From the IMG/VR virus record IMGVR_UViG_3300001460_000004, positions 124,001 through 188,000 of that record: a stretch of 64,000 nucleotides of DNA; one strand, given 5' to 3'. Of this stretch, positions 11,751 through 27,429 are shown piece after piece; position 1 is the first letter of the stretch, and each line of letters opens with the position of its first letter. Made by a program: the position numbers and the translations under genes. Below the pieces are notes generated by a model. The model saw only the letters and a program-made list of their open reading frames with translations, ran no database searches and was not told the DNA's origin.

Positions 11751-12206
11751 ATGGCTAATAAATTCATACAAGGTGCCTACAAGCCTCTTAATCCTCAAAA
11801 GTATGTAGGAAAAGGAACCCCTAGATATCGTAGTGGCTGGGAATGGGCGTTCTTTCAATTTTGTGATACTAATGTTAGTGTTTTGGAATGGGCTAGTGAA
11901 GCTATTGCTATAAAATACAAACATCCTTTTACAGGAAAAATAACAAATTATATCCCAGATGTGTTTGTACGTTATCGCACTAAAAATAATAAAATTTGTA
12001 CAGAATTAGTTGAAATTAAACCCAAAAAACAAAGTGTACTTGAAGGTAAAATGAATGAAAAACAAAAAATAACTGTTGTTATTAATATGGCTAAGTGGGA
12101 AGCAGCAAGAGCCTGGTGTAAAAATGCAGGGATTGTTTTTAGAGTTATAACTGAAGAGCAGATGTTTCATAACGGAAATCCTAAAGCCAAGGCAAAAAGA
12201 CGTTAA
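11751..12206 (+). CDS. Head completion nuclease (T4 gp4-like, TnsA-type PD-(D/E)xK)
   Basis: PLNPQKYVG, YRSGWE, WASE, YIPD...VEIKP, KWEAARAWC...FRVITE. Confidence 0.9.
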   Translation: MANKFIQGAYKPLNPQKYVGKGTPRYRSGWEWAFFQFCDTNVSVLEWASEAIAIKYKHPFTGKITNYIPDVFVRYRTKNNKICTELVEIKPKKQSVLEGKMNEKQKITVVINMAKWEAARAWCKNAGIVFRVITEEQMFHNGNPKAKAKRR

Positions 12207-12766
12207 TGCGGTGTGCATTTGTACATATTCCTAAAACTGGTGGCGGAAGTGTAGTTGAATGGGCAAAACGAAATAATGTCTGGGACCAATTTATTTTTTA
12301 TGGACACAAAGATATTGATTATATTAAAAATTTAGACGATACCTTTGATGCTAGTTTTTGCATTGTAAGAAATACATACAGTCGTTTGGTAAGTGCCTAT
12401 GTGTTCAGTGAGGCAAAGTTTCGCAAAAATATAACCAAAGGTTATCAACTTGAATGGATGACTAATTTATTATTAGCATGGGAAAAAGGTATTGTACCTT
12501 GGCTTGAACTAATGCACGAAACACAACATGTAACATGTAGAGATCAACTTGATTTTAGTCAAGGAGTAGATTTTATTATACAGACATCAGATTTGTATAA
12601 ATCTACAAAGTTACACGAAATGTTTAATATAACTGATCCTATTAGAAAAGAACGCAGAGTACAAATGTTTAACCCTAGCCTGTATTATACTACAGACTTT
12701 ATTAATTGTGTCAATAGACTATATAAAGACGAGATAGCATACTTTAACTACCAACCGGATATATGA
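12206..12766 (+). CDS. Sulfotransferase family 2-like protein
   Basis: FVHIPKTGGGS (5'-PSB loop), VRNTYSRLVSAY (3'-PB). Confidence 0.8.
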   Translation: MRCAFVHIPKTGGGSVVEWAKRNNVWDQFIFYGHKDIDYIKNLDDTFDASFCIVRNTYSRLVSAYVFSEAKFRKNITKGYQLEWMTNLLLAWEKGIVPWLELMHETQHVTCRDQLDFSQGVDFIIQTSDLYKSTKLHEMFNITDPIRKERRVQMFNPSLYYTTDFINCVNRLYKDEIAYFNYQPDI

Positions 12767-12794: not shown

Positions 12795-13280
12795 ATGACC
12801 AAACAACTTGAAGAATTATTTGATGTAGAATCAACACCAAAGGGCTGGGAAACAACCGTGCCAGATATTCCTGTTGAAGATACACAAACTTCATTATCAG
12901 AAACATATCAGGCCATTGATAAGATAGAAGCAGCATTGCCTACAGTCAGGGGACTAGAAGCATCTGATGCTGAAATGGATGACCTTGCAGTAAAAGCTAG
13001 AGAAAGTTTTGAAGACCTAATGAACTTAGGAATGAATGTTGATAGTCGCTATGCTAGTGACATATTAAGCGTTGCAAGCCAGATGCTTGGACATGCAATT
13101 ACTGCCAAAACAGCCAAAGCAAATAAAAAGCTAAAGATGATTGATCTACAATTAAAGAAAGCCCGGCTGGATCAAACAAGTGGTGATCCAAATATGCAAG
13201 AAGGATCGGGTACTCTAGTTGATCGTAACGAGTTGCTGCAATCACTGCGACAAGCTAAATCAAGCGATAGCGATAAATAA
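12795..13280 (+). CDS. Probable terminase small subunit-like helical protein
   Basis: Helical/coiled-coil ORF ending ...DRNELLQSL, late promoter upstream; size and style resemble gp16. Confidence 0.45.
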   Translation: MTKQLEELFDVESTPKGWETTVPDIPVEDTQTSLSETYQAIDKIEAALPTVRGLEASDAEMDDLAVKARESFEDLMNLGMNVDSRYASDILSVASQMLGHAITAKTAKANKKLKMIDLQLKKARLDQTSGDPNMQEGSGTLVDRNELLQSLRQAKSSDSDK

Positions 13281-13296
13281 AATATAGGATACTAAC

Positions 13297-13899
13297 ATGA
13301 AAAATTTGTCACAATATCTCACTGAGACTGCACAAACTTACGATTATAGAATTAAAATCGTAGGTGAATTACCAAATGGCTTTATGAAAAGTTTTAAAAA
13401 ATGCTTAGACAAATATAACCCGTCAAGCATTAGTGACATCAAAAAGACTCCAGTAGTAAGTGCCCCTCTTGACTTTCCCAATTTTAATAACGAATTAGTT
13501 AACATTATGGATGTAGTGTTTAACTACCCGGCTGCTGAAGATGAAATCCGTCAACTAGCAAAATTGTCAGGATTAAATCCAGATAAAATTATTATTAATA
13601 CTGCAAAATATGCAGCTAGTATGGATGCAGAAGTTGCAGGAATTCAAGACCAAAACACAGACTTGCTTAATTCAGCATATCCAGATGATAATGCAGAACA
13701 AAAGAAAGCAAGTAAAGATTATGGTGATGGTAATCAGCAAGTAGTAAAAAATAATGCAGACGAAGCAACTTGGACTGTAGCAGGTGGTAAAACACCTCCA
13801 GCTGAATATACTAGCAGCCTTCCAATGGGTGATAAAAGTCCACTAACTGACATCAAACGCCCACCACTACCAGCAACTGGTAATCACCCAAAAGGATAA
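13297..13899 (+). CDS. Putative internal head/prohead protein (MKNLSQYLTE N-terminus)
   Basis: Capsid-targeting-like N-terminus, TAAATA upstream. Confidence 0.55.
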   Translation: MKNLSQYLTETAQTYDYRIKIVGELPNGFMKSFKKCLDKYNPSSISDIKKTPVVSAPLDFPNFNNELVNIMDVVFNYPAAEDEIRQLAKLSGLNPDKIIINTAKYAASMDAEVAGIQDQNTDLLNSAYPDDNAEQKKASKDYGDGNQQVVKNNADEATWTVAGGKTPPAEYTSSLPMGDKSPLTDIKRPPLPATGNHPKG

Positions 13900-13903
13900 T
13901 ATT

Positions 13904-15538
13904 ATGAACAATATGTACAAAATTTTAGAATCGTTTAATTCAGTAACAAACGAAGATATTGCTGCAAAAGATGCTGCAGTAATGAACAAACAAAAAAACT
14001 ACAAACCTTTTGGTAAATCTGATCCTGACTATGAAACTGGTGTTGCTCGTGATCCTAAAAAAGATAAAATGTTTGACGAAGATATTGATGCAGAAGATGC
14101 TGCAGTAATGAACAAACAAAAAAACTACAAGCCTTTTGGTAAATCTGATCCTGATTATGAAACTGGTGTTGCCCGTAATTCTAAAAAAGATAAAATGTTT
14201 GACGAAGGCTATGGTTCCATGGTATCTCCAGCCGCTAAAAAAGCCATTGATGCTCGAGTAGCCGCTAATACAGCAGCACTTAAAGCAAAAGGCAAAAAGG
14301 CTGACGAATCTTACTCTCCTGGTGATGAAAACGAAGAAGATATGGTAAGCAATTGCTGTAGTGCCCCTATTTCAGATGTTAGGGATGGGCACGGCAGATG
14401 CTCAGATTGTAAAGAAATGGCAAGTGCAGTTAAATTAGATGAAGACGTGAATGAATCAAAATTTGTTTTTTTCAGTGCAGATGAAGGTGGAATTAATGTA
14501 TCAATTGATAAGGAAACAGCTGGCTGGGCATATAGTAGTGATGAGCTATGCGAATTGTTAAACAAATATAATATTAGCAGTGCTGATAGATTGGCGCACA
14601 GCAGCTCTATAGACTTTGCTAGTGAAGAAGGCTTTGATACAGACGGTGATGCACATGATATGATTCAAGATGCGTTTGTTAAGTGCGGTATTACTGAAGA
14701 TACTGCATTAATGAATGAAGCAGATGTTGAAGAAAATGCATTTAATCAAGCGGCGGCCGCGGCGGCAAGAGCCAATAAGTCAGAGTTTGAGTTTGGTGGT
14801 AAGACACATAAAACTACAATGAAAAAAGACACAGCACATAAGCTAGATGATGATGTACAAATTGACGAAGGTACAGAAATGGGCAGCATAGGCGGAATTG
14901 ATATTAAACAGTTTGGCATGGGCAAAGGTAAACTTGGCCTGCAACTTACTGGGCCTGATGGTGCTGTACAACTATCTAAAAAAGATTGTGCATCACTTGC
15001 AAAAAGAATTACTAAATGGTGCGATAGCGATGGTGCACGACCCGGCGAATACGACGAAGCAATAGAAGAAACTACTACCGCAGGTAGTGTTGCAGTATCC
15101 GAAGAACCAAAAAAGCCAGATATGAGTGCAAGTGTTTATGAGTCTGCTTATATTGATACACTTAACGAAAGTGTCAACATTACAACTAATATGAGTAGTG
15201 ACGGAGCTGACAGTATGACAGTAAGTGCTACTGACGAAGATGCAACAGCATTGGCTATGTTACTACGCAATGCTGGCATGGCAGGATCCTCATCTGGTTA
15301 TCAAGAAGTTGATGTTGATGTTGCTGAAGACTACAGCAACAGCCCTGAAGAGCAGTATCAAACTACTGAGTATCAGCAAAATAATATTGCAGGCGGCTTA
15401 AATGGACCAAAAACACAAGTTAATCCTAACAATCGCGGAGATAATCCTTTAGCAATGAAAGGTTTAGGAAACGGCGGATCAGGCCAAATTAATATTGATG
15501 AAACAAAACTATGGTCATTATATAAGGAAATGAACTAA
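13904..15538 (+). CDS. Acidic modular putative head polyprotein with internal duplication
   Basis: 544 aa, many hydrophobic-x-E sites, 42-aa tandem repeat. Confidence 0.65.
   Translation: MNNMYKILESFNSVTNEDIAAKDAAVMNKQKNYKPFGKSDPDYETGVARDPKKDKMFDEDIDAEDAAVMNKQKNYKPFGKSDPDYETGVARNSKKDKMFDEGYGSMVSPAAKKAIDARVAANTAALKAKGKKADESYSPGDENEEDMVSNCCSAPISDVRDGHGRCSDCKEMASAVKLDEDVNESKFVFFSADEGGINVSIDKETAGWAYSSDELCELLNKYNISSADRLAHSSSIDFASEEGFDTDGDAHDMIQDAFVKCGITEDTALMNEADVEENAFNQAAAAAARANKSEFEFGGKTHKTTMKKDTAHKLDDDVQIDEGTEMGSIGGIDIKQFGMGKGKLGLQLTGPDGAVQLSKKDCASLAKRITKWCDSDGARPGEYDEAIEETTTAGSVAVSEEPKKPDMSASVYESAYIDTLNESVNITTNMSSDGADSMTVSATDEDATALAMLLRNAGMAGSSSGYQEVDVDVAEDYSNSPEEQYQTTEYQQNNIAGGLNGPKTQVNPNNRGDNPLAMKGLGNGGSGQINIDETKLWSLYKEMN
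13952..14206 (+). repeat. 126-bp in-frame tandem duplication (2 copies)
   Basis: EDIAAKDAAVMNKQKNYKPFGKSDPDYETGVARDPKKDKMFD repeated nearly identically; units start at 13952 and 14078. Confidence 0.95.
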
Positions 15539-16839
15539 TGAAATCACTGGGAGCATATCTATTAGAAACAGAAAAATTACAAAACTATGCAATGCCCGGT
15601 GACGGATTTGGTTTAGAAATTAATAATTCATTAAGTTTAGACACGCATATAATTGAAGTATTTGAAGATGGAATACTCATTAACACTGACGACACAGCAT
15701 ATAATTTGTTAGCGGAAAATGGGTGTACATTTGAAGACCAAAGTCCCATGGAACTAAATGCTAGCATTGAAAATGATCACGTTGGCGAAGGCTACAAAGT
15801 TATGCCTCCAATGGACGACAAGTATCAACCACGTAATGGACTCGAAGGACCTTTTACTACGCTAAGTGGAAAAGTAGTATACTATGATCCACGAGAAGGT
15901 AGTTACTACGATCCAGACACAGACATTTATATGTCATACGATGAATTTCAAAACTATGATAAAGACTACACTGACATGCGAAGCGATGAAGACATGGGCA
16001 GTGATGCCGACGAAGCACGTTTAAAAGTAGCAAGTACATTAGATGCACAAGAAGGCCCAGTTGATGAAGCTGGCTGTTCAAATAGTAGGCTGAGAGAACT
16101 TGCTGGACTTCCTGAAACAACAATAAAAGATAGAGACGCATACGATGCTAGTGAACCAGGTGATAAGAAAAAAATTACACTTCCAAAAGCACCTTGGGAA
16201 AAAGACAAAGAAGTAAATGAAGCTGGTACTGTAAGAACAATGCCACTTGATAGTATTGATTGGCCAGATTCAAACATGCTACAAACTGCCACTGATGCTA
16301 TTAGATATGACTACACTTCAAATGATGCATTTAGTCACTTGTACAGTATGCATGGTGATGACCACGGAAAATGGTTAAGAGCAAACGAAGATGATATACT
16401 TGCAATGTTCTCACAGTATAGTATGGACGAAAGTATCGATGAAGAATCTGATGCAGAGATGGACGATCATGCAGAACGTGCAGGTAAAGAAGTTGCACAT
16501 GATGCACATTATGATGGTCGTAAGCACTCGGGTAGAGATGGCAAAGATGTCACTAAAGACTTAGAATATGATGATTACAAAGATCACCATATGGATGAAG
16601 CAGAATATCAAGGACGCAAAGTTAAATTAAACAAACCAATGCGTGGAGATGTTAAAAAATCAAAAGTATATGTCAAGGATCCTAAAACAGGAAACACTAA
16701 AAAAGTTAACTTTGGTGACCCAGATATGAAGATAAAAAAGTCAAACCCTAAAAGACGTAAAAGTTTTAGAGCCAGGCATAATTGTGAAAACCCAGGTCCA
16801 AAGACTAAAGCACGTTATTGGTCATGCAGAGCTTGGTAA
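15538..16839 (+). CDS. Acidic modular putative head protein with basic C-terminal module
   Basis: MKSLGAYLLE start, RLRELAGL motif, basic terminal module (...KKVNFGDP...RKSFRARHNC...ARYWSCRAW). Confidence 0.7.
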   Translation: MKSLGAYLLETEKLQNYAMPGDGFGLEINNSLSLDTHIIEVFEDGILINTDDTAYNLLAENGCTFEDQSPMELNASIENDHVGEGYKVMPPMDDKYQPRNGLEGPFTTLSGKVVYYDPREGSYYDPDTDIYMSYDEFQNYDKDYTDMRSDEDMGSDADEARLKVASTLDAQEGPVDEAGCSNSRLRELAGLPETTIKDRDAYDASEPGDKKKITLPKAPWEKDKEVNEAGTVRTMPLDSIDWPDSNMLQTATDAIRYDYTSNDAFSHLYSMHGDDHGKWLRANEDDILAMFSQYSMDESIDEESDAEMDDHAERAGKEVAHDAHYDGRKHSGRDGKDVTKDLEYDDYKDHHMDEAEYQGRKVKLNKPMRGDVKKSKVYVKDPKTGNTKKVNFGDPDMKIKKSNPKRRKSFRARHNCENPGPKTKARYWSCRAW

Positions 16840-17137: not shown

Positions 17138-17515
17138 ATGAAAGCCAAAGACGTCATTGGTGAAAGTGTAGCACGTAATAATGCTAGAACACCAGGCGAA
17201 TTAAAACCCAGTTATGACTATGCAAACCCAGGTGCATTAACAGGCAAAGGCATGGACCGTTATTATGATTTGTATCGGGCAAGCATGATGATGGGAAGAT
17301 TGCCTAGCGATTTAGACAATATTGATGAAGCAAGCTGGTTAAACAATACTGGATACTTTGGTTATACAAACGAAGTTGATAAAGCAAAGATTGAAGCTGC
17401 ATTTAAGGCACTAGGACTACCAGTTATAGAATTAATTGAACAAGGCAGTGAGGAAATGCCTGAGGTAAACACTAAATCTCCAGTTATAGGATTTAAAGGA
17501 TATCCAGGAACATGA
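17138..17515 (+). CDS. Hypothetical, paralogue of the next gene
   Basis: Shares Y.L.R..M, I..ASW and PEVNT.SPV.GFKGY with 17512-17877. Confidence 0.7.
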   Translation: MKAKDVIGESVARNNARTPGELKPSYDYANPGALTGKGMDRYYDLYRASMMMGRLPSDLDNIDEASWLNNTGYFGYTNEVDKAKIEAAFKALGLPVIELIEQGSEEMPEVNTKSPVIGFKGYPGT

Positions 17516-17877
17516 GAGCAATAGAGTTCATACAAGAAAACAAAGACGGTAAACTTAATAAAATTTCGTCTAATGCAATGACTCAAACTGATAAATTTAA
17601 AGATGATGGTAGTGATAGAGCGTATACATTAAATCGTATTATGATGGCTACCGCAGTAGCCGACGGATCTAACACAAAACCAGTTGATATAAATCAAGCA
17701 AGTTGGCAAGAAGATTATAACACAGCACATCCGTATACTGAACAAGAAATGAATATGATGCAAAGTGCATACAACACGGTTGACAGCAAAGTTAAAAAAG
17801 TTGTGAAACGCAAAGAATCTAAAGAACACCCTGAAGTAAACACTATTAGTCCAGTTACTGGATTTAAAGGTTATTAA
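17512..17877 (+). CDS. Hypothetical, paralogue of the previous gene (MRAIEFIQE N-terminus)
   Basis: Shared C-terminal PEVNTISPVTGFKGY. Confidence 0.7.
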   Translation: MRAIEFIQENKDGKLNKISSNAMTQTDKFKDDGSDRAYTLNRIMMATAVADGSNTKPVDINQASWQEDYNTAHPYTEQEMNMMQSAYNTVDSKVKKVVKRKESKEHPEVNTISPVTGFKGY

Positions 17878-21624: not shown

Positions 21625-22971
21625 ATGGATAACTCAAGTAACAATATGTTGTTTAACCTTTTGGTAACAAAAGGATTTGAACCAGAACTATTAGATATTA
21701 GTGGTAAACCTATCACTAATCCTACTGAAGCAGAAATGTTTAGCTTTGAATATCGCGGTGACGAAAAAAATTACGGCACAGTTGTTATTTTGCTAGGCAA
21801 AGAAGGAGACTTGCAGGTTTTCTTTGGAGACAATCTTGGCAAAACAATGGAACTTGGAGACAAGGACGAATGGTATGATTTTCTTGCACAGATTAAAAAA
21901 TTTGCCACTCGTAATTTGTTAAACTTTAAAGTTAACAACATTAACAAACTAAAGTATACCATGCAAGGAATAGCAGCAATTAATGAGGGTCTGTTTGAAG
22001 GTCAGTACTATGGCAAAAAAGATGTTAGCTACAATGGCCCTAAGGATGGTGCTAGATTAATGATCAAACACAAAAATCCAATTGGGGAAAATGGCAAACG
22101 ATATACTCAAGTTGATAAGTTATACGTAGAAAATTCAGAAGGCGAAAGATTTAAGCTACCTTTTAAAAATATTTTAGGTGGAAAAATAATGACTCGTCAT
22201 GTTAAAAATGGCGGAACTCCTTACGATGCATTAGGTACTCATATTAATGATATGATGGAAGAAATGAATGTGTTAGGAAAATTTATTAATGCTACACGTA
22301 ATAAAACATACGAAGATGCAGGAAATGCTATGGTGGAAACTGCTATCCAGCATTATAAAAAACTAAAGAGTAAAGCTAAAAAAATGGTCAGTGACAGAGG
22401 ATATGCCAGAGCCAAACATGACTTTGATCCCGGTAAAATACATGAGAGTGAAATTGCAACAGAGGTATTAAAGAGATATTTTGTTGAACAATCAATTGAT
22501 CAACGCATTGAAGAAGCACTACCGATGCTTGCACGTTTGGGCATAGCCTCAGCGGCAAATAACGTAGGAGAAGAAAAAATGAAAGAAGTAAATGAATTTA
22601 GTGAATGGGTTGAAGATGTAACCGAAGGGACTTGGGCTGTTCCAGAAACACGTGAAGAAATAAAAGCACTTGAACAACTACTAGCGGAACCATTAATTTT
22701 AGGACCAGATGCAACCAACGCAACCAACGCAATTTACGGATACATTGGTGATGATGAATTGTTTGATACACTATACGAGTTATCACTTGATAATCCTGAT
22801 GCAGATGCAAGACCTGCTATTATAGCTCGTTTAGAAAATATGGGAATTGACATTAACATAGATGATCGTCCAGTAACACCAAATGAAGATTTAGACACTG
22901 ATGGTGTTATGATGACTACCCCAAGTAATATGAGCAGCGAGTCTCTTAAACGTTTAGCTGGAATGCTATAA
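21625..22971 (+). CDS. Hypothetical late protein, probably virion/prohead-associated
   Basis: 448 aa; leaderless late promoter; ends LKRLAGML. Confidence 0.7.
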   Translation: MDNSSNNMLFNLLVTKGFEPELLDISGKPITNPTEAEMFSFEYRGDEKNYGTVVILLGKEGDLQVFFGDNLGKTMELGDKDEWYDFLAQIKKFATRNLLNFKVNNINKLKYTMQGIAAINEGLFEGQYYGKKDVSYNGPKDGARLMIKHKNPIGENGKRYTQVDKLYVENSEGERFKLPFKNILGGKIMTRHVKNGGTPYDALGTHINDMMEEMNVLGKFINATRNKTYEDAGNAMVETAIQHYKKLKSKAKKMVSDRGYARAKHDFDPGKIHESEIATEVLKRYFVEQSIDQRIEEALPMLARLGIASAANNVGEEKMKEVNEFSEWVEDVTEGTWAVPETREEIKALEQLLAEPLILGPDATNATNAIYGYIGDDELFDTLYELSLDNPDADARPAIIARLENMGIDINIDDRPVTPNEDLDTDGVMMTTPSNMSSESLKRLAGML

Positions 22972-24119: not shown

Positions 24120-24770
24120 ATGCTAACTGAACTGGATTGGCTCTTATATCCAGAAGACTGTGAGGTGCTAATAACGCCTCACAGTCTATCACCATATCTA
24201 ATTGAAAAGAATGGCAGTACTGCACTTCGTTGGTATAGTGAACAAAACAACTGGAAAATTGCTAAAAATCATCAAATATATGATTTAGAAAACATAGATG
24301 TTTTTATACGCCCGCCAAAAGTTAGATATTTAAGTGGACTGTATACCTGGTTGCAATGGCTTAAACGTGATCATAATTTAGACTTAGCAACTGCTGAATG
24401 GTTTGCTAAAGAGTTTAGTTTTTTAAACAGGCACTATCTACCACAGTTCCATTGGTTACTTAACTTGGCACGTTATGTAAACCCTACATGTACTATAAAC
24501 TTTCATAAATTTGAAACGTTTTCTCAACACTTCCCTAATAATCATAACCCACATGGGTTTAAGTATGAAGCTGATTGGGGTCGTAACGTATTACAGCAAC
24601 AAAAAAAACTGGATTTTTGGTTTTATCTTGATGATATATTACGTGAACTTGATGGCAAAAGTTTTAATTGGTATGAATTTAGAAATTATTTTAAATCAAA
24701 CTACAGTGATACATATCACGTGTTAACAAGGACTAGTAGCTCAATTAGTAATGTATTGTCCACGACTTGA
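24120..24770 (+). CDS. Sulfotransferase-like protein
   Basis: IEKNGSTALR and FIRPPKVRYLSG resemble 5'-PSB and 3'-PB motifs; HYLPQ. Confidence 0.55.
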   Translation: MLTELDWLLYPEDCEVLITPHSLSPYLIEKNGSTALRWYSEQNNWKIAKNHQIYDLENIDVFIRPPKVRYLSGLYTWLQWLKRDHNLDLATAEWFAKEFSFLNRHYLPQFHWLLNLARYVNPTCTINFHKFETFSQHFPNNHNPHGFKYEADWGRNVLQQQKKLDFWFYLDDILRELDGKSFNWYEFRNYFKSNYSDTYHVLTRTSSSISNVLSTT

Positions 24771-25737
24771 TCATTTTGCAAGACTAAACAGCAATGGCAC
24801 TATTGGAAAATGTGGTCATATGACAATCCAACATGGATTTAAAAATGTTGAACAAATGCAAAATAGCAAATGGTTGGCTAGAGTAAGAGAAGATTTTTTA
24901 AATCAAACTTGGCCAAAAGAATGTATACGCTGTAGAGATACTGAAGCAGTAACACAACGTAGTATTAGACTTTCTAGTATTGAAAGAGATCGATTATTAT
25001 CAAAATTTGATTCTAACTATTTAATTGTTGGTGGTGTACTTGACAACATATGTAATAGTGCATGTCAAAGCTGTAGCAGTGATCTAAGCACAAAAATTGG
25101 TGCATTGGATGGCAGTAGGATTAAAGTTAATAATGAACATTTACTGGATGCACTACCTTGGGAAAACATCATTGAGTTAGATATAAATGGTGGCGAACCT
25201 ACAGCAAGTCCACGCTATCAAACGTTGCTTGAAAATCCACCGCCAAATGTAAAAATCATTAGGATTAATACTAATTGTAGTAGGCCAATGCGAGCCATTG
25301 AAAAATTACTACAACGACGAATTAAAGTAATTGTAACAGCAAGTTTAGATGGTATAGGCGCAATACACGATTATGTGCGTTGGCCAATTAAATGGAACAA
25401 CTATATAAAAGTTATTAACATATATAAACAATTACGTGATCAATATAGTAATTTAGAACTACAAGCATGGACTACAGTTAGCTCGTTAAACGCAATGGAT
25501 TTACCAAACATAATTAAATATTGTAATACAAACAACATTAATCATGACTGGAGTTTTTTAACATTCCCTTCTGCATTAGATGCTCGATATTATAATAGAC
25601 TAACAGCTAATGTGTCATTAGACACAGTTGCAACATTACAAGACAATACTACACAACTTGATGAGTTTATTACTAAACAAGATAAACTACGAAACATAGC
25701 AATGGAGGACTATTATGAAGATTGCTATCACCGGTGA
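24751..25737 (+). CDS. Radical SAM protein with N-terminal twitch/SPASM-like Cys cluster
   Basis: CNSACQSC, GGEP, SLDG..DYVRWP; N-terminal CP...GKC...ECIRC. Confidence 0.85.
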   Translation: MYCPRLDHFARLNSNGTIGKCGHMTIQHGFKNVEQMQNSKWLARVREDFLNQTWPKECIRCRDTEAVTQRSIRLSSIERDRLLSKFDSNYLIVGGVLDNICNSACQSCSSDLSTKIGALDGSRIKVNNEHLLDALPWENIIELDINGGEPTASPRYQTLLENPPPNVKIIRINTNCSRPMRAIEKLLQRRIKVIVTASLDGIGAIHDYVRWPIKWNNYIKVINIYKQLRDQYSNLELQAWTTVSSLNAMDLPNIIKYCNTNNINHDWSFLTFPSALDARYYNRLTANVSLDTVATLQDNTTQLDEFITKQDKLRNIAMEDYYEDCYHR

Positions 25738-26284
25738 TACTGCTGGGATTGGACTAGCATTAAGTGAAGAATTATCATATCGTGGACATGACATTGTTGG
25801 ATTAAGCAAGCGTAATGGTTATAACATTCGTATTACACCTAAAATAGTTGATTTGATTAAACAGTGTGATATGTTTGTTAACAATGCCCAAGTTGATTTT
25901 GCACAAACACAGTTACTATACGGAGTTTGGAAATGTTGGCAAGAATGCCCTGGTAATATAATTTGGAATATTAGTACAATGCTAACACAATGTCCAAGTA
26001 CTACTGATATAACAGATCTTGATCCAGTTGATATGAATATGTATCGCAATCAAAAACTTGCACTTGAGGATGCACACAACCAATTAAAATTTTTTGGGCA
26101 TGGGCCAAAGATGTGTTTGATTAAACCTGGTAATATACAGACACACTCAGGAAAAACAAATGCATGTAACACCACAGTGTGGGCAAAAACTGTTGTTGAC
26201 ACATATGTAACAGCACATGCACAAGGTATGCATCTTGAAGAAATAAGTATTGGATGGTTAAGCAATAAGGATAACCAAATTTAA
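25715..26284 (+). CDS. Short-chain dehydrogenase/reductase
   Basis: ITGDTAGIG, FVNNA, NIS, YRNQK (YxxxK), IKPG. Confidence 0.85.
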   Translation: MKIAITGDTAGIGLALSEELSYRGHDIVGLSKRNGYNIRITPKIVDLIKQCDMFVNNAQVDFAQTQLLYGVWKCWQECPGNIIWNISTMLTQCPSTTDITDLDPVDMNMYRNQKLALEDAHNQLKFFGHGPKMCLIKPGNIQTHSGKTNACNTTVWAKTVVDTYVTAHAQGMHLEEISIGWLSNKDNQI

Positions 26285-27429
26285 TGGATCCAAAAACTGC
26301 ACTTAAAAATGGTACATTCTGTCCATGTCCGTGGACTGGGTTTATTATGCAAGCTGATGGTAGTATTAAAAACTGTGTTGCATCCCAAGATGAAATTGGC
26401 AACATAAACAAAAATACAATACAAGAAGTGTTGGCTAGTGATCATAACCGAGAAATTAAGACAGCAATGTTAAATGGTATAAAGCACAGTAGTTGTGAAA
26501 CATGCCACATAAAAGAACAAAACAATCCATTGCGTACTAATATTATAAGCAATAGAATATATTATCTTAAAGAATTAGCTAGAGTTCCGTATGATCTTTA
26601 TACTGACGACGATGCGTTTGATCTAAACACAGTTGATCTTAGATGGAGAAACACTTGTAATTTTGCGTGTGTGTATTGTGATCCAATCAGCAGTAGTAAA
26701 TGGGCACAAGAACTCAATCAAAAGATACATATGCAAAATAGCAGTAGGCAAGATTTACTTGACTATGTGTTAGAAAATGCACACAAGTTAAAGAATATTT
26801 ACTTTGCTGGTGGCGAACCTTTAATGATCAAAGAAAATAAACAAGTACTCAAAAAACTTAAACAAGTAAACCCATTGCTAAACATTAGAGTGAACACAAA
26901 TCTAAGTAAAACCAATACTGGTATATTTGAACAGTTGTGTGAATTTAAAAATGTACATTGGATTATAAGTGTTGACTCAATGAGTACTGAATTTGAATAT
27001 ATACGCCATGGTGGTAATTGGGAACAATTTAAACAAAACTTCAAAATTATTACACAATTAGATCACAAAATTAGTTTTAACATGCTTTGGTTGATACTAA
27101 ATGCTCATAGTTTGTTTGATACTATTGATTGGTTAACTGACCAAGGCATGCACAACAATAGTATAGTACTTGGTCCTATTACTGGACCAAGTTATCTAGA
27201 CGTGAGAAATTTGCCAATTGAATTGCAACATTCTTTAGAAGATCGTATTATACAACGGCAAGACACCAACAGCACCTGGTTACTGGAACATGGATATCAA
27301 GTGCTTTTAGATCATTTAAGAAAACCATTTAATGGTAATTTAGAAAATAGTCAACACCGTCTAAGTGAGATGGACAAGCGTCGAAATATTAATCATAGGG
27401 ATATTTTTCCATGGCTATACAAACTGTAA
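26284..27429 (+). CDS. Radical SAM protein with N-terminal twitch/SPASM-like Cys cluster
   Basis: FCPCPW...KNC...CETC; CNFACVYC; AGGEP; SVD..FEYIR. Confidence 0.9.
   Translation: MDPKTALKNGTFCPCPWTGFIMQADGSIKNCVASQDEIGNINKNTIQEVLASDHNREIKTAMLNGIKHSSCETCHIKEQNNPLRTNIISNRIYYLKELARVPYDLYTDDDAFDLNTVDLRWRNTCNFACVYCDPISSSKWAQELNQKIHMQNSSRQDLLDYVLENAHKLKNIYFAGGEPLMIKENKQVLKKLKQVNPLLNIRVNTNLSKTNTGIFEQLCEFKNVHWIISVDSMSTEFEYIRHGGNWEQFKQNFKIITQLDHKISFNMLWLILNAHSLFDTIDWLTDQGMHNNSIVLGPITGPSYLDVRNLPIELQHSLEDRIIQRQDTNSTWLLEHGYQVLLDHLRKPFNGNLENSQHRLSEMDKRRNINHRDIFPWLYKL

What the first reader, a model, noticed from the sequence alone, without database searches (positions are those of the whole stretch)
13904..16839. 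Two apparent protease-punctuated polyproteins whose duplication unit equals one cleavage module
Seen: both ORFs read as strings of unrelated short modules separated by hydrophobic-x-E sites (MFDE, LDE, VNE, ITE, MNE, VEE, IDE, IEE, VYE, LNE, VAE; VGE, VDE, VNE, MDE). Modules include a Cys4 one (SNCCSAP...RCSDC) and a basic terminal one. The recent 126-bp duplication begins and ends at such Glu junctions. Inference: an expandable array of peptides released by the prohead protease inside the capsid, evolving by module gain and loss.
Basis: partly seen in the sequence, partly recalled or inferred. Interest (0 to 1): 0.7.

Follow-up and report, generated by a model that had tools for sequence, protein, structure and literature searches.

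The report
Modular capsid-cargo precursor proteins, jumbo phage
Two neighbouring genes of an uncultured marine jumbo phage encode chains of small shuffled protein modules that look like cargo loaded into the phage head and cut apart there by the head-maturation protease, an expanded version of the phage T4 internal-protein system.

Summary
The observation largely holds. Both ORFs are real and are mosaics: hundreds of metagenomic relatives share only discrete modules. The 126-bp tandem duplication is real. [LIVM]-x-Glu is enriched about 2-fold, while the Asp equivalent is not.

The protease reading is indirectly well supported. The window belongs to a 230-kb fragment of a roughly 350-kb myophage that encodes a T4 gp21-type prohead protease. 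Five of six consecutive genes here begin like the T4 capsid-targeting sequence.

The basic C-terminal module of ORF2 is preceded by [LVMI]-x-E|A in 136 of 137 diverse relatives. In eight viral genomes without that protease, seven encode the module free-standing. Five of these begin Met-Ala at the position matching the predicted cut. Four cultured protease-positive phages, and this genome, carry the extended form.

- Many hxE sites are unconserved or lie inside folded domains.
- The duplicated unit ends in Asp in most relatives, so "duplication unit = cleavage module" does not hold.
- No proteomic evidence exists.

Verdict: a new variant of a known kind, namely T4 internal proteins and giant-phage propeptides.

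The parts
13904..15538 (+). ORF1, 544 aa, acidic (net -43), a mosaic multi-module protein.
   Evidence: 281 metagenomic homologues, most sharing only single modules.
13904..13930 (+). ORF1 N-terminus MNNMYKILE|S, a CTS-like leader with I7-L8-E9.
   Evidence: The family N-terminus is MDNIYKILES or MDNIYDTLAKL, and E9 is conserved in only about 40% of relatives.
13950..14207 (+). Tandem 126-bp duplication, 2 x 42 aa (aa 17-58 and 59-100). It is a K/D-rich unit (...NKQKNYKPFGKSDPDYETGVAR..KKDKMFD) followed by Glu.
   Evidence: The region is predicted disordered (pLDDT 33-44). A single-copy allele is in L045.
14342..14428 (+). Cys4 module (aa 147-175, CC...CxxC), a small beta ribbon.
   Evidence: (pLDDT 55-75). 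The same module occurs in P0158 alongside ORF2-type modules. One search shows loose ends from another contig.
14456..14698 (+). Confident alpha/beta domain (aa 185-265). It follows the linker KLDE|DVNE|S.
   Evidence: pLDDT 75-95. No significant PDB fold match.
14711..14869 (+). Module C (aa 270-322): MNE|ADVEE|NAFNQAAAAAARA.K.EFEFGGKTHKTTMKKDTAHKLDDDVQIDE|G. It is the most widespread ORF1 module.
   Evidence: E272 90% and E277 100% conserved, P3 hydrophobic 97-100%. One search gives pLDDT 90-94.
15056..15535 (+). Module D, the conserved C-terminal region (aa 385-544). It has conserved sites IEE|T (389), VYE|S (413) and LNE|S (422), and a scaffold-like LLRNAGMAG motif (aa 450-461, nt 15251-15286).
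15538..16839 (+). ORF2, 433 aa, an acidic body with a strongly basic C-terminal module.
15538..15738 (+). ORF2 N-module (aa 1-67), a helix plus beta-sheet domain. It starts with the CTS-like MKSLGAYLLE|T.
   Evidence: family consensus M-K-[STN]-[LF]-[RK]-[DE]-Y-[LI]-x-E-[SA], with E10 in 54/72 and [LI]8 in 66/72. One search gives pLDDT 84-89.
15781..15972 (+). VGE|G junction followed by the Tyr-rich beta-hairpin K module (aa 85-145; phrog_13298). The module is free-standing in KVP40-type vibriophages.
   Evidence: E84 nearly invariant, G85 invariant in module-bearing relatives with unrelated upstream sequence; pLDDT 94-97.
16084..16116 (+). Internal SRLRELAGLPE motif. It has the same form as the conserved C-terminus of the scaffolding protein.
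16222..16431 (+). Four-helix module M2 (aa 229-298). It is preceded by VNE|A and followed by MDE|S and IDE|E.
   Evidence: all five relatives with this module have x-x-E before it, four with a hydrophobic P3, and [MV]DE after it..
16591..16602 (+). Best-supported predicted cleavage site, M-D-E|A (aa 352-355).
   Evidence: E354 in 71/72, A355 in 68/72. P1 Glu in 136/137, P1' Ala in 137/137, P3 L/V/M/I/F in 134/137, with otherwise unrelated upstream sequence.
16600..16836 (+). Basic C-terminal module (aa 355-433; phrog_7595), a virus-only family. It is free-standing in podoviral pelagiphages and roseophages and in an archaeal virus.
   Evidence: (3960 clusters at 50% identity).
12795..13899 (+). 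Two upstream genes of the same cluster. w12795 starts MTKQLEELFDVE. w13297 starts MKNLSQYLTE|T, and its N-half is homologous to the PA5oct and 121Q virion structural proteins.
17138..17877 (+). Two small downstream genes with CTS-like starts (MKAKDVIGE|S and MRAIEFIQE|N). They share a C-terminal PEVNTxSPVxGFKGY motif.

Best explanation
ORF1 and ORF2 are precursors of capsid-internal (ejection or internal) proteins. They sit in a hypervariable cargo locus of a T4-superfamily jumbo myophage, between the tail-tube and head-completion genes and the terminase gene.

Inferred mechanism: a roughly 10-residue N-terminal leader, equivalent to the T4 capsid-targeting sequence, brings each precursor into the scaffolding core of the prohead. 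A scaffold-like 'L-x-x-L-A-G-[ILM]' motif may contribute. The gp21-type prohead protease then cuts after Glu in [LIVM]-x-E followed by a small residue. This removes the leader, cuts acidic linkers, and at least frees the basic C-terminal module of ORF2, which then begins at Ala355. The folded modules would stay with the DNA and enter the host with it.

The locus evolves by shuffling, insertion, loss and tandem duplication of modules that are free-standing small genes in other viruses.

Shown: the mosaic architecture, the Glu-specific motif enrichment, the conserved junctions, the presence of the protease, the co-variation with it, synteny with a virion protein of PA5oct, and the duplication polymorphism.

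Inferred: encapsidation, cleavage, and the fate and function of the products.
For: 1. Protease. Peptidase_S77 lies at genome 99751-100389. The adjacent scaffold-like protein has 27 hxE against 10.8 expected (z 6.4, the top of 219 proteins). The protease ranks 3rd, ORF2 7th and ORF1 8th.

2. Glu specificity. hxE is enriched and hxD is not, both in the two ORFs and in 240 relatives. hxE[AGS] is 2.8-3.6x expected, while hxD[AGS] is 0.76-0.78x. In T4, Asp at CTS position 10 blocks processing (PMC9026906).

3. CTS-like leaders. [LIVM]-x-E ending at residue 9 or 10 occurs in 14 of 262 genes. Five of these lie among six consecutive genes here, and two more are the protease and the core gene beside it. 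The ORF2-family consensus MKSLRDYLxE[SA] resembles the T4 CTS MKTYQEFIAE (sequence found in bioRxiv 10.1101/2021.01.19.427310). It has hydrophobic or aromatic residues at positions 4 and 7 and I/L-x-E at 8-10, the positions reported as important in T4.

4. Junction before the basic module. [LVMI]-x-E|A occurs in 136 of 137 instances with unrelated upstream sequence.

5. Natural experiment across 12 other viral genomes plus this one.
- Four S77-positive cultured phages carry the module with an N-extension or fusion ending h-x-E|[A/S/G]. They are HTVC008M, C48C1, Melnitz-3 and immuto. This genome does the same.
- Eight S77-negative genomes were checked. Seven have it free-standing. Five of those begin M-A-x-Y, matching ORF2 residues A355-Y357.
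- The eighth, CRP-6, fuses it to an XkdF-type prohead protease.
-.

6. Synteny. The same slot in a related 133-kb fragment holds three different small module proteins. In PA5oct the same slot holds EST35_0203, annotated as a structural protein found by ESI-MS/MS (PMC7318152).

7. Structure. The AF2 models place E84, E228, E298/302 and E354 (ORF2), and E180/184, E272/277, E322 and E389-422 (ORF1), in or within a few residues of linkers between confident domains.
Against: - There is no direct evidence of encapsidation or cleavage for these proteins or any close relative.
- The CTS-like helix of ORF2 (aa 4-13) is modelled as part of the folded N-domain.
- Half of the ORF1 family lacks Glu at position 9.
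- hxE glutamates are on average no better conserved than other glutamates (0.42 vs 0.40 and 0.39 vs 0.32).
- They are not enriched in low-confidence segments (11/20 and 9/16, against about 46% of residues).
- Breakpoint coincidence with hxE is weak, and null for ORF2.
- The conserved E-A at the start of the basic module could be part of that subfamily's fold.
- The co-variation rests on few independent lineages; three of the S77-positive phages are Kyanoviridae.
- The Atlas lists predicted structural look-alikes of the basic module inside proteins annotated as enzymes, such as a cytidylyltransferase. Capsid loading is not obvious for these.
Confidence: 0.6

Rival explanations
1. The proteins are packaged virion proteins but are not polyproteins. 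At most a leader or long propeptide is removed. The inner modules stay linked as one multi-domain protein with flexible acidic linkers, as in many giant-phage head proteins.
For: - Only a subset of hxE sites is conserved.
- The N-module and the basic C-module travel together in most of the 120 ORF2 relatives, with a variable middle. This fits 'propeptide plus mature domain' as described for SPN3US and phiKZ (PMC5694885).
- The PA5oct syntenic protein is listed simply as a structural protein.
Against: - Conserved h-x-E|G/A sites flank the K and M2 modules in relatives with unrelated neighbours.
- hxE followed by a small residue is enriched 2.8-3.6x along the whole proteins.
- P0245 carries two basic modules, each with its own h-x-E|A.
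Confidence: 0.22
2. The proteins are not virion cargo. They are cytoplasmic accessory or host-interaction proteins made of fused small domains, and the hxE excess is a by-product of acidic linkers abutting hydrophobic domain ends.
For: - Free-standing copies of the basic module in podoviruses lie among early and DNA-metabolism genes.
- No known virion family hits either ORF in Pfam or PHROGs.
- Breakpoints correlate with any Glu-rich stretch.
Against: - The Asp control argues against a simple acidic-linker effect: Asp is commoner than Glu in both ORFs, yet hxD is at or below expectation.
- The genes lie inside the structural gene block, with a virion-protein homologue directly upstream.
- The CTS-like leaders are clustered.
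- The module is fused to a prohead protease in CRP-6.
Confidence: 0.12
3. The proteins are auxiliary prohead-core or scaffold components, like T4 gp67, gp68 and gp22. They would be degraded to small peptides and mostly expelled, with no function after assembly.
For: - They are acidic and hxE-rich.
- They carry the scaffold's C-terminal LAG-type motif.
- The duplicated unit is disordered.
Against: - They contain several confidently folded, widely conserved modules, and a basic module that exists as an independent gene in viruses of other types.
- The locus is hypervariable, whereas scaffold genes are conserved.
Confidence: 0.06

Closest known systems
Phage T4 internal proteins (IPI, IPII, IPIII, Alt) with their capsid-targeting sequence, processed by gp21
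   Same: - A gp21-type protease is encoded.
- There is a roughly 10-residue leader ending [I/L]-x-E.
- The payloads behind a shared leader are diverse and fast-evolving.
- The protease motif is specific for Glu over Asp.
- The payload includes a small basic protein.
(PMC3012670.)
   Different: - There is no sequence homology to the T4 IPs.
- These precursors are long chains of 4-6 modules with several internal candidate sites, not one leader plus one domain.
- The modules are shared with unrelated virus types.
- A second, scaffold-like motif is present.
Processed head and ejection proteins of giant phages phiKZ, 201phi2-1 and SPN3US (long propeptides, multiple cleavage sites)
   Same: Many head proteins are cut after Glu at a three-residue motif. 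Propeptides carry redundant sites and are thought to target the protein into the prohead (PMC5694885; PMC9026906).
   Different: - The phage lineage is different and so is the motif (S/A/G-x-E or A-x-E there).
- Those proteins are not reported as shuffled arrays of modules that are independent genes elsewhere.
- No homology was detected.
Polyvalent proteins of phages and conjugative elements (Iyer et al. 2017, PMC5512222)
   Same: Many unrelated domains sit in one polypeptide, encoded among virion genes. They are predicted to be packaged and injected, sometimes after proteolytic processing.
   Different: - Polyvalent proteins are large, built mainly of recognisable enzymatic effector domains, and often carry their own peptidase.
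- Here the modules are small and uncharacterised, no peptidase is embedded, and cutting is inferred to be done in trans by the prohead protease.
T4 prohead core proteins gp22, gp67 and gp68
   Same: They are acidic and dense in L/I-x-E sites. The genome's own scaffold homologue shows the strongest such signal.
   Different: ORF1 and ORF2 are not adjacent to the protease. They have a weaker site density, contain conserved folded modules, and lie in a variable locus.

Membership tests
T4-type CTS-bearing internal proteins | The genome encodes a gp21-type (Peptidase_S77) prohead protease. | tested here: met
   92 bits against a cut-off of 27, at genome 99751-100389.
T4-type CTS-bearing internal proteins | An N-terminal leader of about 10 residues ends in [I/L]-x-E, with hydrophobic residues at positions 4 and 7. 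| tested here: met
   ORF2 starts MKSLGAYLLE, and this is conserved in the family. ORF1 starts MNNMYKILE (E9), conserved in only about 40% of relatives.
T4-type CTS-bearing internal proteins | Sequence homology to IPI, IPII, IPIII or Alt. | tested here: not met
   No Pfam or PHROG internal-protein family hit. tblastn of ORF1 against 50,697 phage records found nothing.
T4-type CTS-bearing internal proteins | The protein is present in the mature head with the leader removed. | not testable with these tools
   This needs virion mass spectrometry. The only indirect support is synteny with a PA5oct protein detected by ESI-MS/MS.
T4-type CTS-bearing internal proteins | The genes lie in a hypervariable locus with a conserved leader and divergent payloads. 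| tested here: met
   The same slot in L036 holds three different genes, and the relatives are mosaic.
Viral polyprotein (every segment released as a product) | A conserved protease site at every module boundary. | tested here: inconclusive
   Strong at E84|G, E354|A, E272/277 and E389. Absent or unconserved at others, for example E59/E101, where relatives have Asp.
Viral polyprotein (every segment released as a product) | The segments exist as separate stable products. | not testable with these tools
   Only the basic module and the K module are known as free-standing genes elsewhere. Module C is almost never free-standing.
Polyvalent proteins (Iyer et al. 2017) | Several recognisable effector or enzymatic domains, often with an embedded MPTase-type peptidase. 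| tested here: not met
   No significant Pfam domain in either ORF. No significant PDB fold match.
phiKZ/SPN3US processed head proteins | Homology to those proteins and the S/A/G-x-E cleavage motif of their protease. | tested here: not met
   The nearest cultured relatives are PA5oct, Atu_ph07 and the RaK2 group. The enriched motif has a hydrophobic P3.

The most novel reading that the evidence does not exclude
Marine jumbo phages of the PA5oct/RaK2/Atu_ph07 supergroup run an open-ended cargo system. Dozens of small, virus-only protein modules, each a free-standing gene in other viruses, are strung behind transferable capsid-loading tags. One tag is a T4-like N-terminal leader. The other is the scaffold's own C-terminal 'LxxLAG[IL]' peptide, used like an encapsulin cargo-loading peptide. 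The prohead protease then frees the modules inside the head. New injected payloads would be acquired simply by inserting or duplicating a module between Glu sites.
Probability: 0.25. Interest if true: 0.8.

Novelty: new variant of a known kind. Interest (0 to 1): 0.62.

Why it matters
If the reading is right, it extends the T4 internal-protein principle to an abundant group of uncultured marine and brine jumbo phages. That principle is a short leader plus a Glu-specific protease, which lets almost any protein be loaded into the head and injected.

It also shows the principle operating on concatenated, shuffled modules rather than on single proteins.

It assigns a likely location, inside the capsid, to a very large virus-only protein family. 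That family has 3960 clusters at 50% identity for the basic module alone and no known function.

Finally, it yields precise, testable cleavage-site predictions (E10|T11, E84|G85, E354|A355) and a candidate new capsid-loading peptide. Such tags are also of practical interest for packaging foreign proteins in phage heads.

Tried and rejected
- **Fold searches.** Foldseek of both AF2 models against the PDB gave no match with E <= 0.001. The best were weak RNase-H-like/S11-like and OCRE/WW-like resemblances, so no module function could be assigned.
- **Complex prediction.** The major capsid protein was folded with the last 35 residues of the scaffold to test the LAG motif as a capsid-binding peptide. 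The tool returned 'no answer' (score 0.12, mark 0.34). This is not evidence either way.
- **Breakpoint statistic.** BLAST segment ends were compared with hxE positions under circular shifts. The result was weak for ORF1 (P 0.02-0.07) and null for ORF2 (P 0.2-0.6). Junctions do sit in Glu-rich stretches in general. BLAST ends are fuzzy, and conserved sites lie inside segments, so the test has low power.
- **Disorder test.** hxE sites are not enriched in segments with pLDDT below 50.
- **Conservation test.** Mean conservation of site glutamates is about equal to that of other glutamates.
- **Free-standing module C.** The search returned only four short ORFs, three of them on contigs under 5 kb and probably gene fragments. 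The independent check used for the basic module could not be repeated.
- **Fragment alignment.** An alignment of BLAST-cut fragments (A1) was misaligned by MAFFT and was discarded.
- **Other searches.** tblastn of ORF1 against cultured phages found nothing. The PA5oct supplementary proteome tables are not held. A literature search for the LAG motif strings found nothing relevant.
- **Protease in related fragments.** The S77 search in five related IMG/VR fragments was uninformative, because they are only 14-37% complete.
- **Assembly artefact rejected.** The junction piece is present in four independent runs.
Full report
**Context.** The window is bases 124001-188000 of a 230-kb IMG/VR viral record. 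The record is estimated to be 66% complete, so the genome is roughly 350 kb. The gene content is that of a T4-superfamily jumbo myophage:
- tail sheath (nearest relatives Atu_ph07 and PA5oct, 42-45% identity);
- two tail-tube paralogues and a head-completion protein;
- large terminase, gp32-like SSB and UvsX.

A Peptidase_S77 (T4 gp21-type) prohead protease lies 24 kb upstream of the window. It is flanked, as in T4, by an acidic core gene, a scaffold homologue and the major capsid protein. The phage is found in marine and brine metagenomes from many studies between 2014 and 2025.

**The observation.** Both ORFs are present as described, and every listed hydrophobic-x-Glu string is there.
- Against shuffles of each protein, [LIVM]xE occurs 14 times against 7.3 expected and 12 times against 5.7 expected (P about 0.005 each).
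- The Asp equivalent is under-represented, although Asp is the commoner residue in both proteins.
- The genome supplies a positive control. Ranked by [LIVM]xE z-score, the scaffold homologue is first of 219 proteins (27 against 10.8), the protease third, ORF2 seventh and ORF1 eighth. The genome-wide ratio is only 1.18.
- The signal is a family property. In 120 relatives of each ORF the ratio is 1.65 and 1.79. It rises to 2.8 and 3.6 when a small residue follows the Glu. The Asp versions are 0.99 and 1.10, and 0.76 and 0.78 with the small residue. The relatives share conserved modules, so they are not independent samples.

**Modularity.** ORF1 has 281 significant metagenomic relatives. Only about a dozen relatives of each ORF align along most of its length. 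The rest share discrete blocks.

ORF1 blocks:
- the repeat-bearing N-region (aa 1-101);
- the Cys4 module;
- an alpha/beta domain;
- module C (aa 270-322);
- the C-terminal region D.

ORF2 blocks:
- the N-module (aa 1-67);
- the Tyr-rich K module (aa 85-145, phrog_13298);
- helical module M2;
- the basic C-module (aa 355-433, phrog_7595).

Modules cross between the two families. P0158 combines ORF2's K and M2 modules with ORF1's Cys4 module. The AF2 models agree, showing confident islands separated by low-confidence stretches. The syntenic slot in a related 133-kb fragment holds three different small genes built from the same module pool.

**The duplication.** The 126-bp unit is repeated 2.05 times at 94% identity, with 7 differences of which 4 change the residue.
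- It is not an assembly artefact. A piece bridging the copy 1/copy 2 junction occurs at flank-level depth in four metagenomes from four studies.
- A contig from another sample is 100% identical over 3.9 kb, except that it has one copy, equal to copy 1. The copy number is therefore polymorphic.
- The seven differences, against a background of zero elsewhere, argue against a very recent in-situ duplication. Unequal recombination with a diverged allele is one possible explanation.
- The unit does begin and end after Glu in this sequence.
- The same unit occurs once or twice in about 45 relatives, where it mostly ends in MFDD, with Asp. It is predicted disordered.
- The claim that the duplication unit equals a cleavage module is therefore not supported. 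The looser claim that the array grows by unit duplication is supported.

**Evidence bearing on the protease reading.**

*First: leaders.* [LIVM]-x-E ending at residue 9 or 10 occurs in 14 of 262 genes. Five of these are among six consecutive genes (w13297, ORF1, ORF2, w17138, w17512). Two more are the protease and the core gene next to it. By my own binomial estimate, the chance of such a run is below 1e-3.

Across 72 ORF2 relatives the consensus is M-K-[STN]-[LF]-[RK]-[DE]-Y-[LI]-x-E-[SA]. The T4 capsid-targeting sequence is MKTYQEFIAE (found in bioRxiv 10.1101/2021.01.19.427310). In T4, targeting depends mainly on residues 4 and 7, processing depends on residues 8 and 10, and Asp at position 10 blocks processing (PMC9026906).

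*Second: the junction before the basic module.* This is the best-supported site.
- In 137 instances from proteins that are at most 50% identical overall, P1 is Glu in 136, P1' is Ala in all 137, and P3 is L/V/M/I/F in 134. The preceding residues are otherwise unrelated.
- One protein, P0245, has two basic modules, each with its own h-x-E|A.

*Third: a natural experiment.*
- Eight viral genomes without an S77 protease carry the basic module.
  - Seven have it free-standing.
  - Five of those begin M-A-x-Y, matching ORF2 residues A355-Y357: Aegir, HTVC202P, HTVC112P, CRP-902 and a Nitrosopumilaceae spindle-shaped virus.
  - Two have other short starts: CRP-235 and MedDCM-S30-C28.
  - The eighth, CRP-6, fuses it to an XkdF-type prohead protease.
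- Four cultured S77-positive phages carry it behind an extension or fusion that ends h-x-E|[A/S/G]: HTVC008M, C48C1, Melnitz-3 and immuto. In C48C1 the extension starts MKKFKQYIDE. This genome does the same.
-.
- Removal of the initiator Met before Ala is established knowledge rather than a result obtained here. It would give the free-standing proteins the same N-terminus as the predicted cleavage product.

*Fourth: the other modules.* The K and M2 modules are likewise flanked by conserved x-x-E|G/A/S in relatives whose neighbouring sequence is unrelated, and P3 is hydrophobic in most. Module C always begins h-x-E-A-[DE]-[VIL]-[ED]-E-N-A-F.

*Fifth: virion context.* The upstream gene w13297 is homologous to proteins annotated as virion structural in PA5oct and 121Q-type phages. 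The PA5oct gene in ORF1's slot is annotated as detected by ESI-MS/MS (PMC7318152).

**What does not fit.**
- Taken as a whole, hxE glutamates are no better conserved than other glutamates.
- They are not enriched in low-confidence segments.
- They coincide only weakly with BLAST breakpoints.
- Several lie inside confidently folded domains, for example E40/E43 of ORF2 and E217 of ORF1.
- The leader helix of ORF2 is modelled as packed on its N-domain.
- About half of the ORF1 family has MDNIYDTLAKL, without a Glu at position 9.
- The N-module and the basic module of ORF2 travel together in most relatives. This fits 'long propeptide plus mature C-terminal protein', as in SPN3US and phiKZ (PMC5694885), as well as it fits a polyprotein.
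- No proteomic data exist for these proteins.

**Mechanism proposed.** These are cargo precursors in a hypervariable internal-protein locus. They are loaded into the prohead through an N-terminal leader and cut by the prohead protease at a subset of [LIVM]-x-E|small sites. The minimum is after the leader and before the basic module.

I put about 0.6 on that statement. I put about 0.3 on the fuller claim that every module is released as a separate functional product. Module functions remain unknown, with no significant fold or family matches.

**A further motif.** The scaffolding protein of this phage ends ...IDIKRLAGI. The same C-terminal motif is conserved in PA5oct (LRRLAGIK), Atu_ph07 (LKRLAGIKK), CBB (ISRNAGISKNR), 121Q (LDVLSGINKK) and RaK2 (LSILSGIIKK).

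The motif also occurs in other places:
- inside ORF2 (RLRELAGLPE), w13297 and region D of ORF1;
- at the C-terminus of the 448-aa protein after the terminase;
- at both the N- and C-termini of 32 module-C proteins;
- at the ends of all three variable-slot proteins in L036;
- three times in PA5oct EST35_0203.

By analogy with scaffold C-termini that bind coat proteins in other phages (my own knowledge, not tested here), it may be a second prohead-loading tag. A complex prediction gave no verdict.

**Comparison and novelty.** The system works like the T4 internal proteins, with a leader, a gp21-type protease and diverse payloads. It also resembles the multiply processed head proteins of giant phages, and it overlaps conceptually with polyvalent proteins (PMC5512222).

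It is not a sequence member of any of these. It differs in being a chain of small shuffled modules that are independent genes in unrelated viruses. I found no description of this family, of the conserved junction, or of the LAG motif in the searchable literature. I rate it a new variant of a known kind.

Noticed in passing
Genome 100373-101503 (outside the window, in L001); window 16084-16116, 15251-15286 and the 3' end of 21625-22971; L036; L055; L060; L062-L065: A 'L-x-x-[LN]-[AS]-G-[ILM]' motif forms the conserved C-terminus of the scaffolding protein across the PA5oct, Atu_ph07, CBB, 121Q and RaK2 jumbo phages. It recurs at the termini and junctions of the variable-locus module proteins. 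It may be a capsid-loading peptide.
   Followed up: partly
Genome 98662-99738 (outside the window, in L001:346-1422): The very acidic gene just upstream of the prohead protease sits in the position of T4 gp67/gp68. It contains a tandem duplicate of about 54 aa whose copies are each bounded by VDE|A. It starts MIDKFEQLIE, which resembles a CTS.
   Followed up: no
L057 (Roseobacter phage CRP-6 gp55): The basic module is fused to the N-terminus of an XkdF-type (Peptidase_S78_2) prohead protease. This is an independent hint that the module acts inside capsids.
   Followed up: partly
P0245 (218 aa, metagenomic): The protein consists of two tandem copies of the basic module. Each copy is preceded by its own h-x-E|A (NLEE|AEYQGRK and TIEE|AEYQGKT).
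   Followed up: no
Window 17138-17515, 17512-17877 and 2362-2664: w17138 and w17512 share a C-terminal PEVNTxSPVxGFKGY motif. w17512 (MRAIEFIQE) and the 100-aa ORF at 2362 (MRAIDFISE) share almost the same leader.
   Followed up: no
Window 14384-14427: In two of the four metagenomes laid on the window, a longer contig of another organism or phage matches only the core of the Cys4 module (44 nt, 3 mismatches). This fits a co-occurring phage with a P0158-like gene and recent exchange of the module.
   Followed up: no
Window 12206-12766 and 24751-27429: A sulfotransferase-like gene (phrog_3347) sits inside the structural block, between the head-completion gene and the cargo cluster. Two radical-SAM genes lie next to the SSB and UvsX region.
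   Followed up: no
L053 (Methylophilales phage Melnitz-3, gene 18): A cultured Kyanoviridae phage has a multi-module protein of more than 600 aa. It contains DUF5824 and a CC..C motif and ends in the basic module behind MME|S. This makes it a tractable isolate for testing the cleavage prediction.
   Followed up: partly
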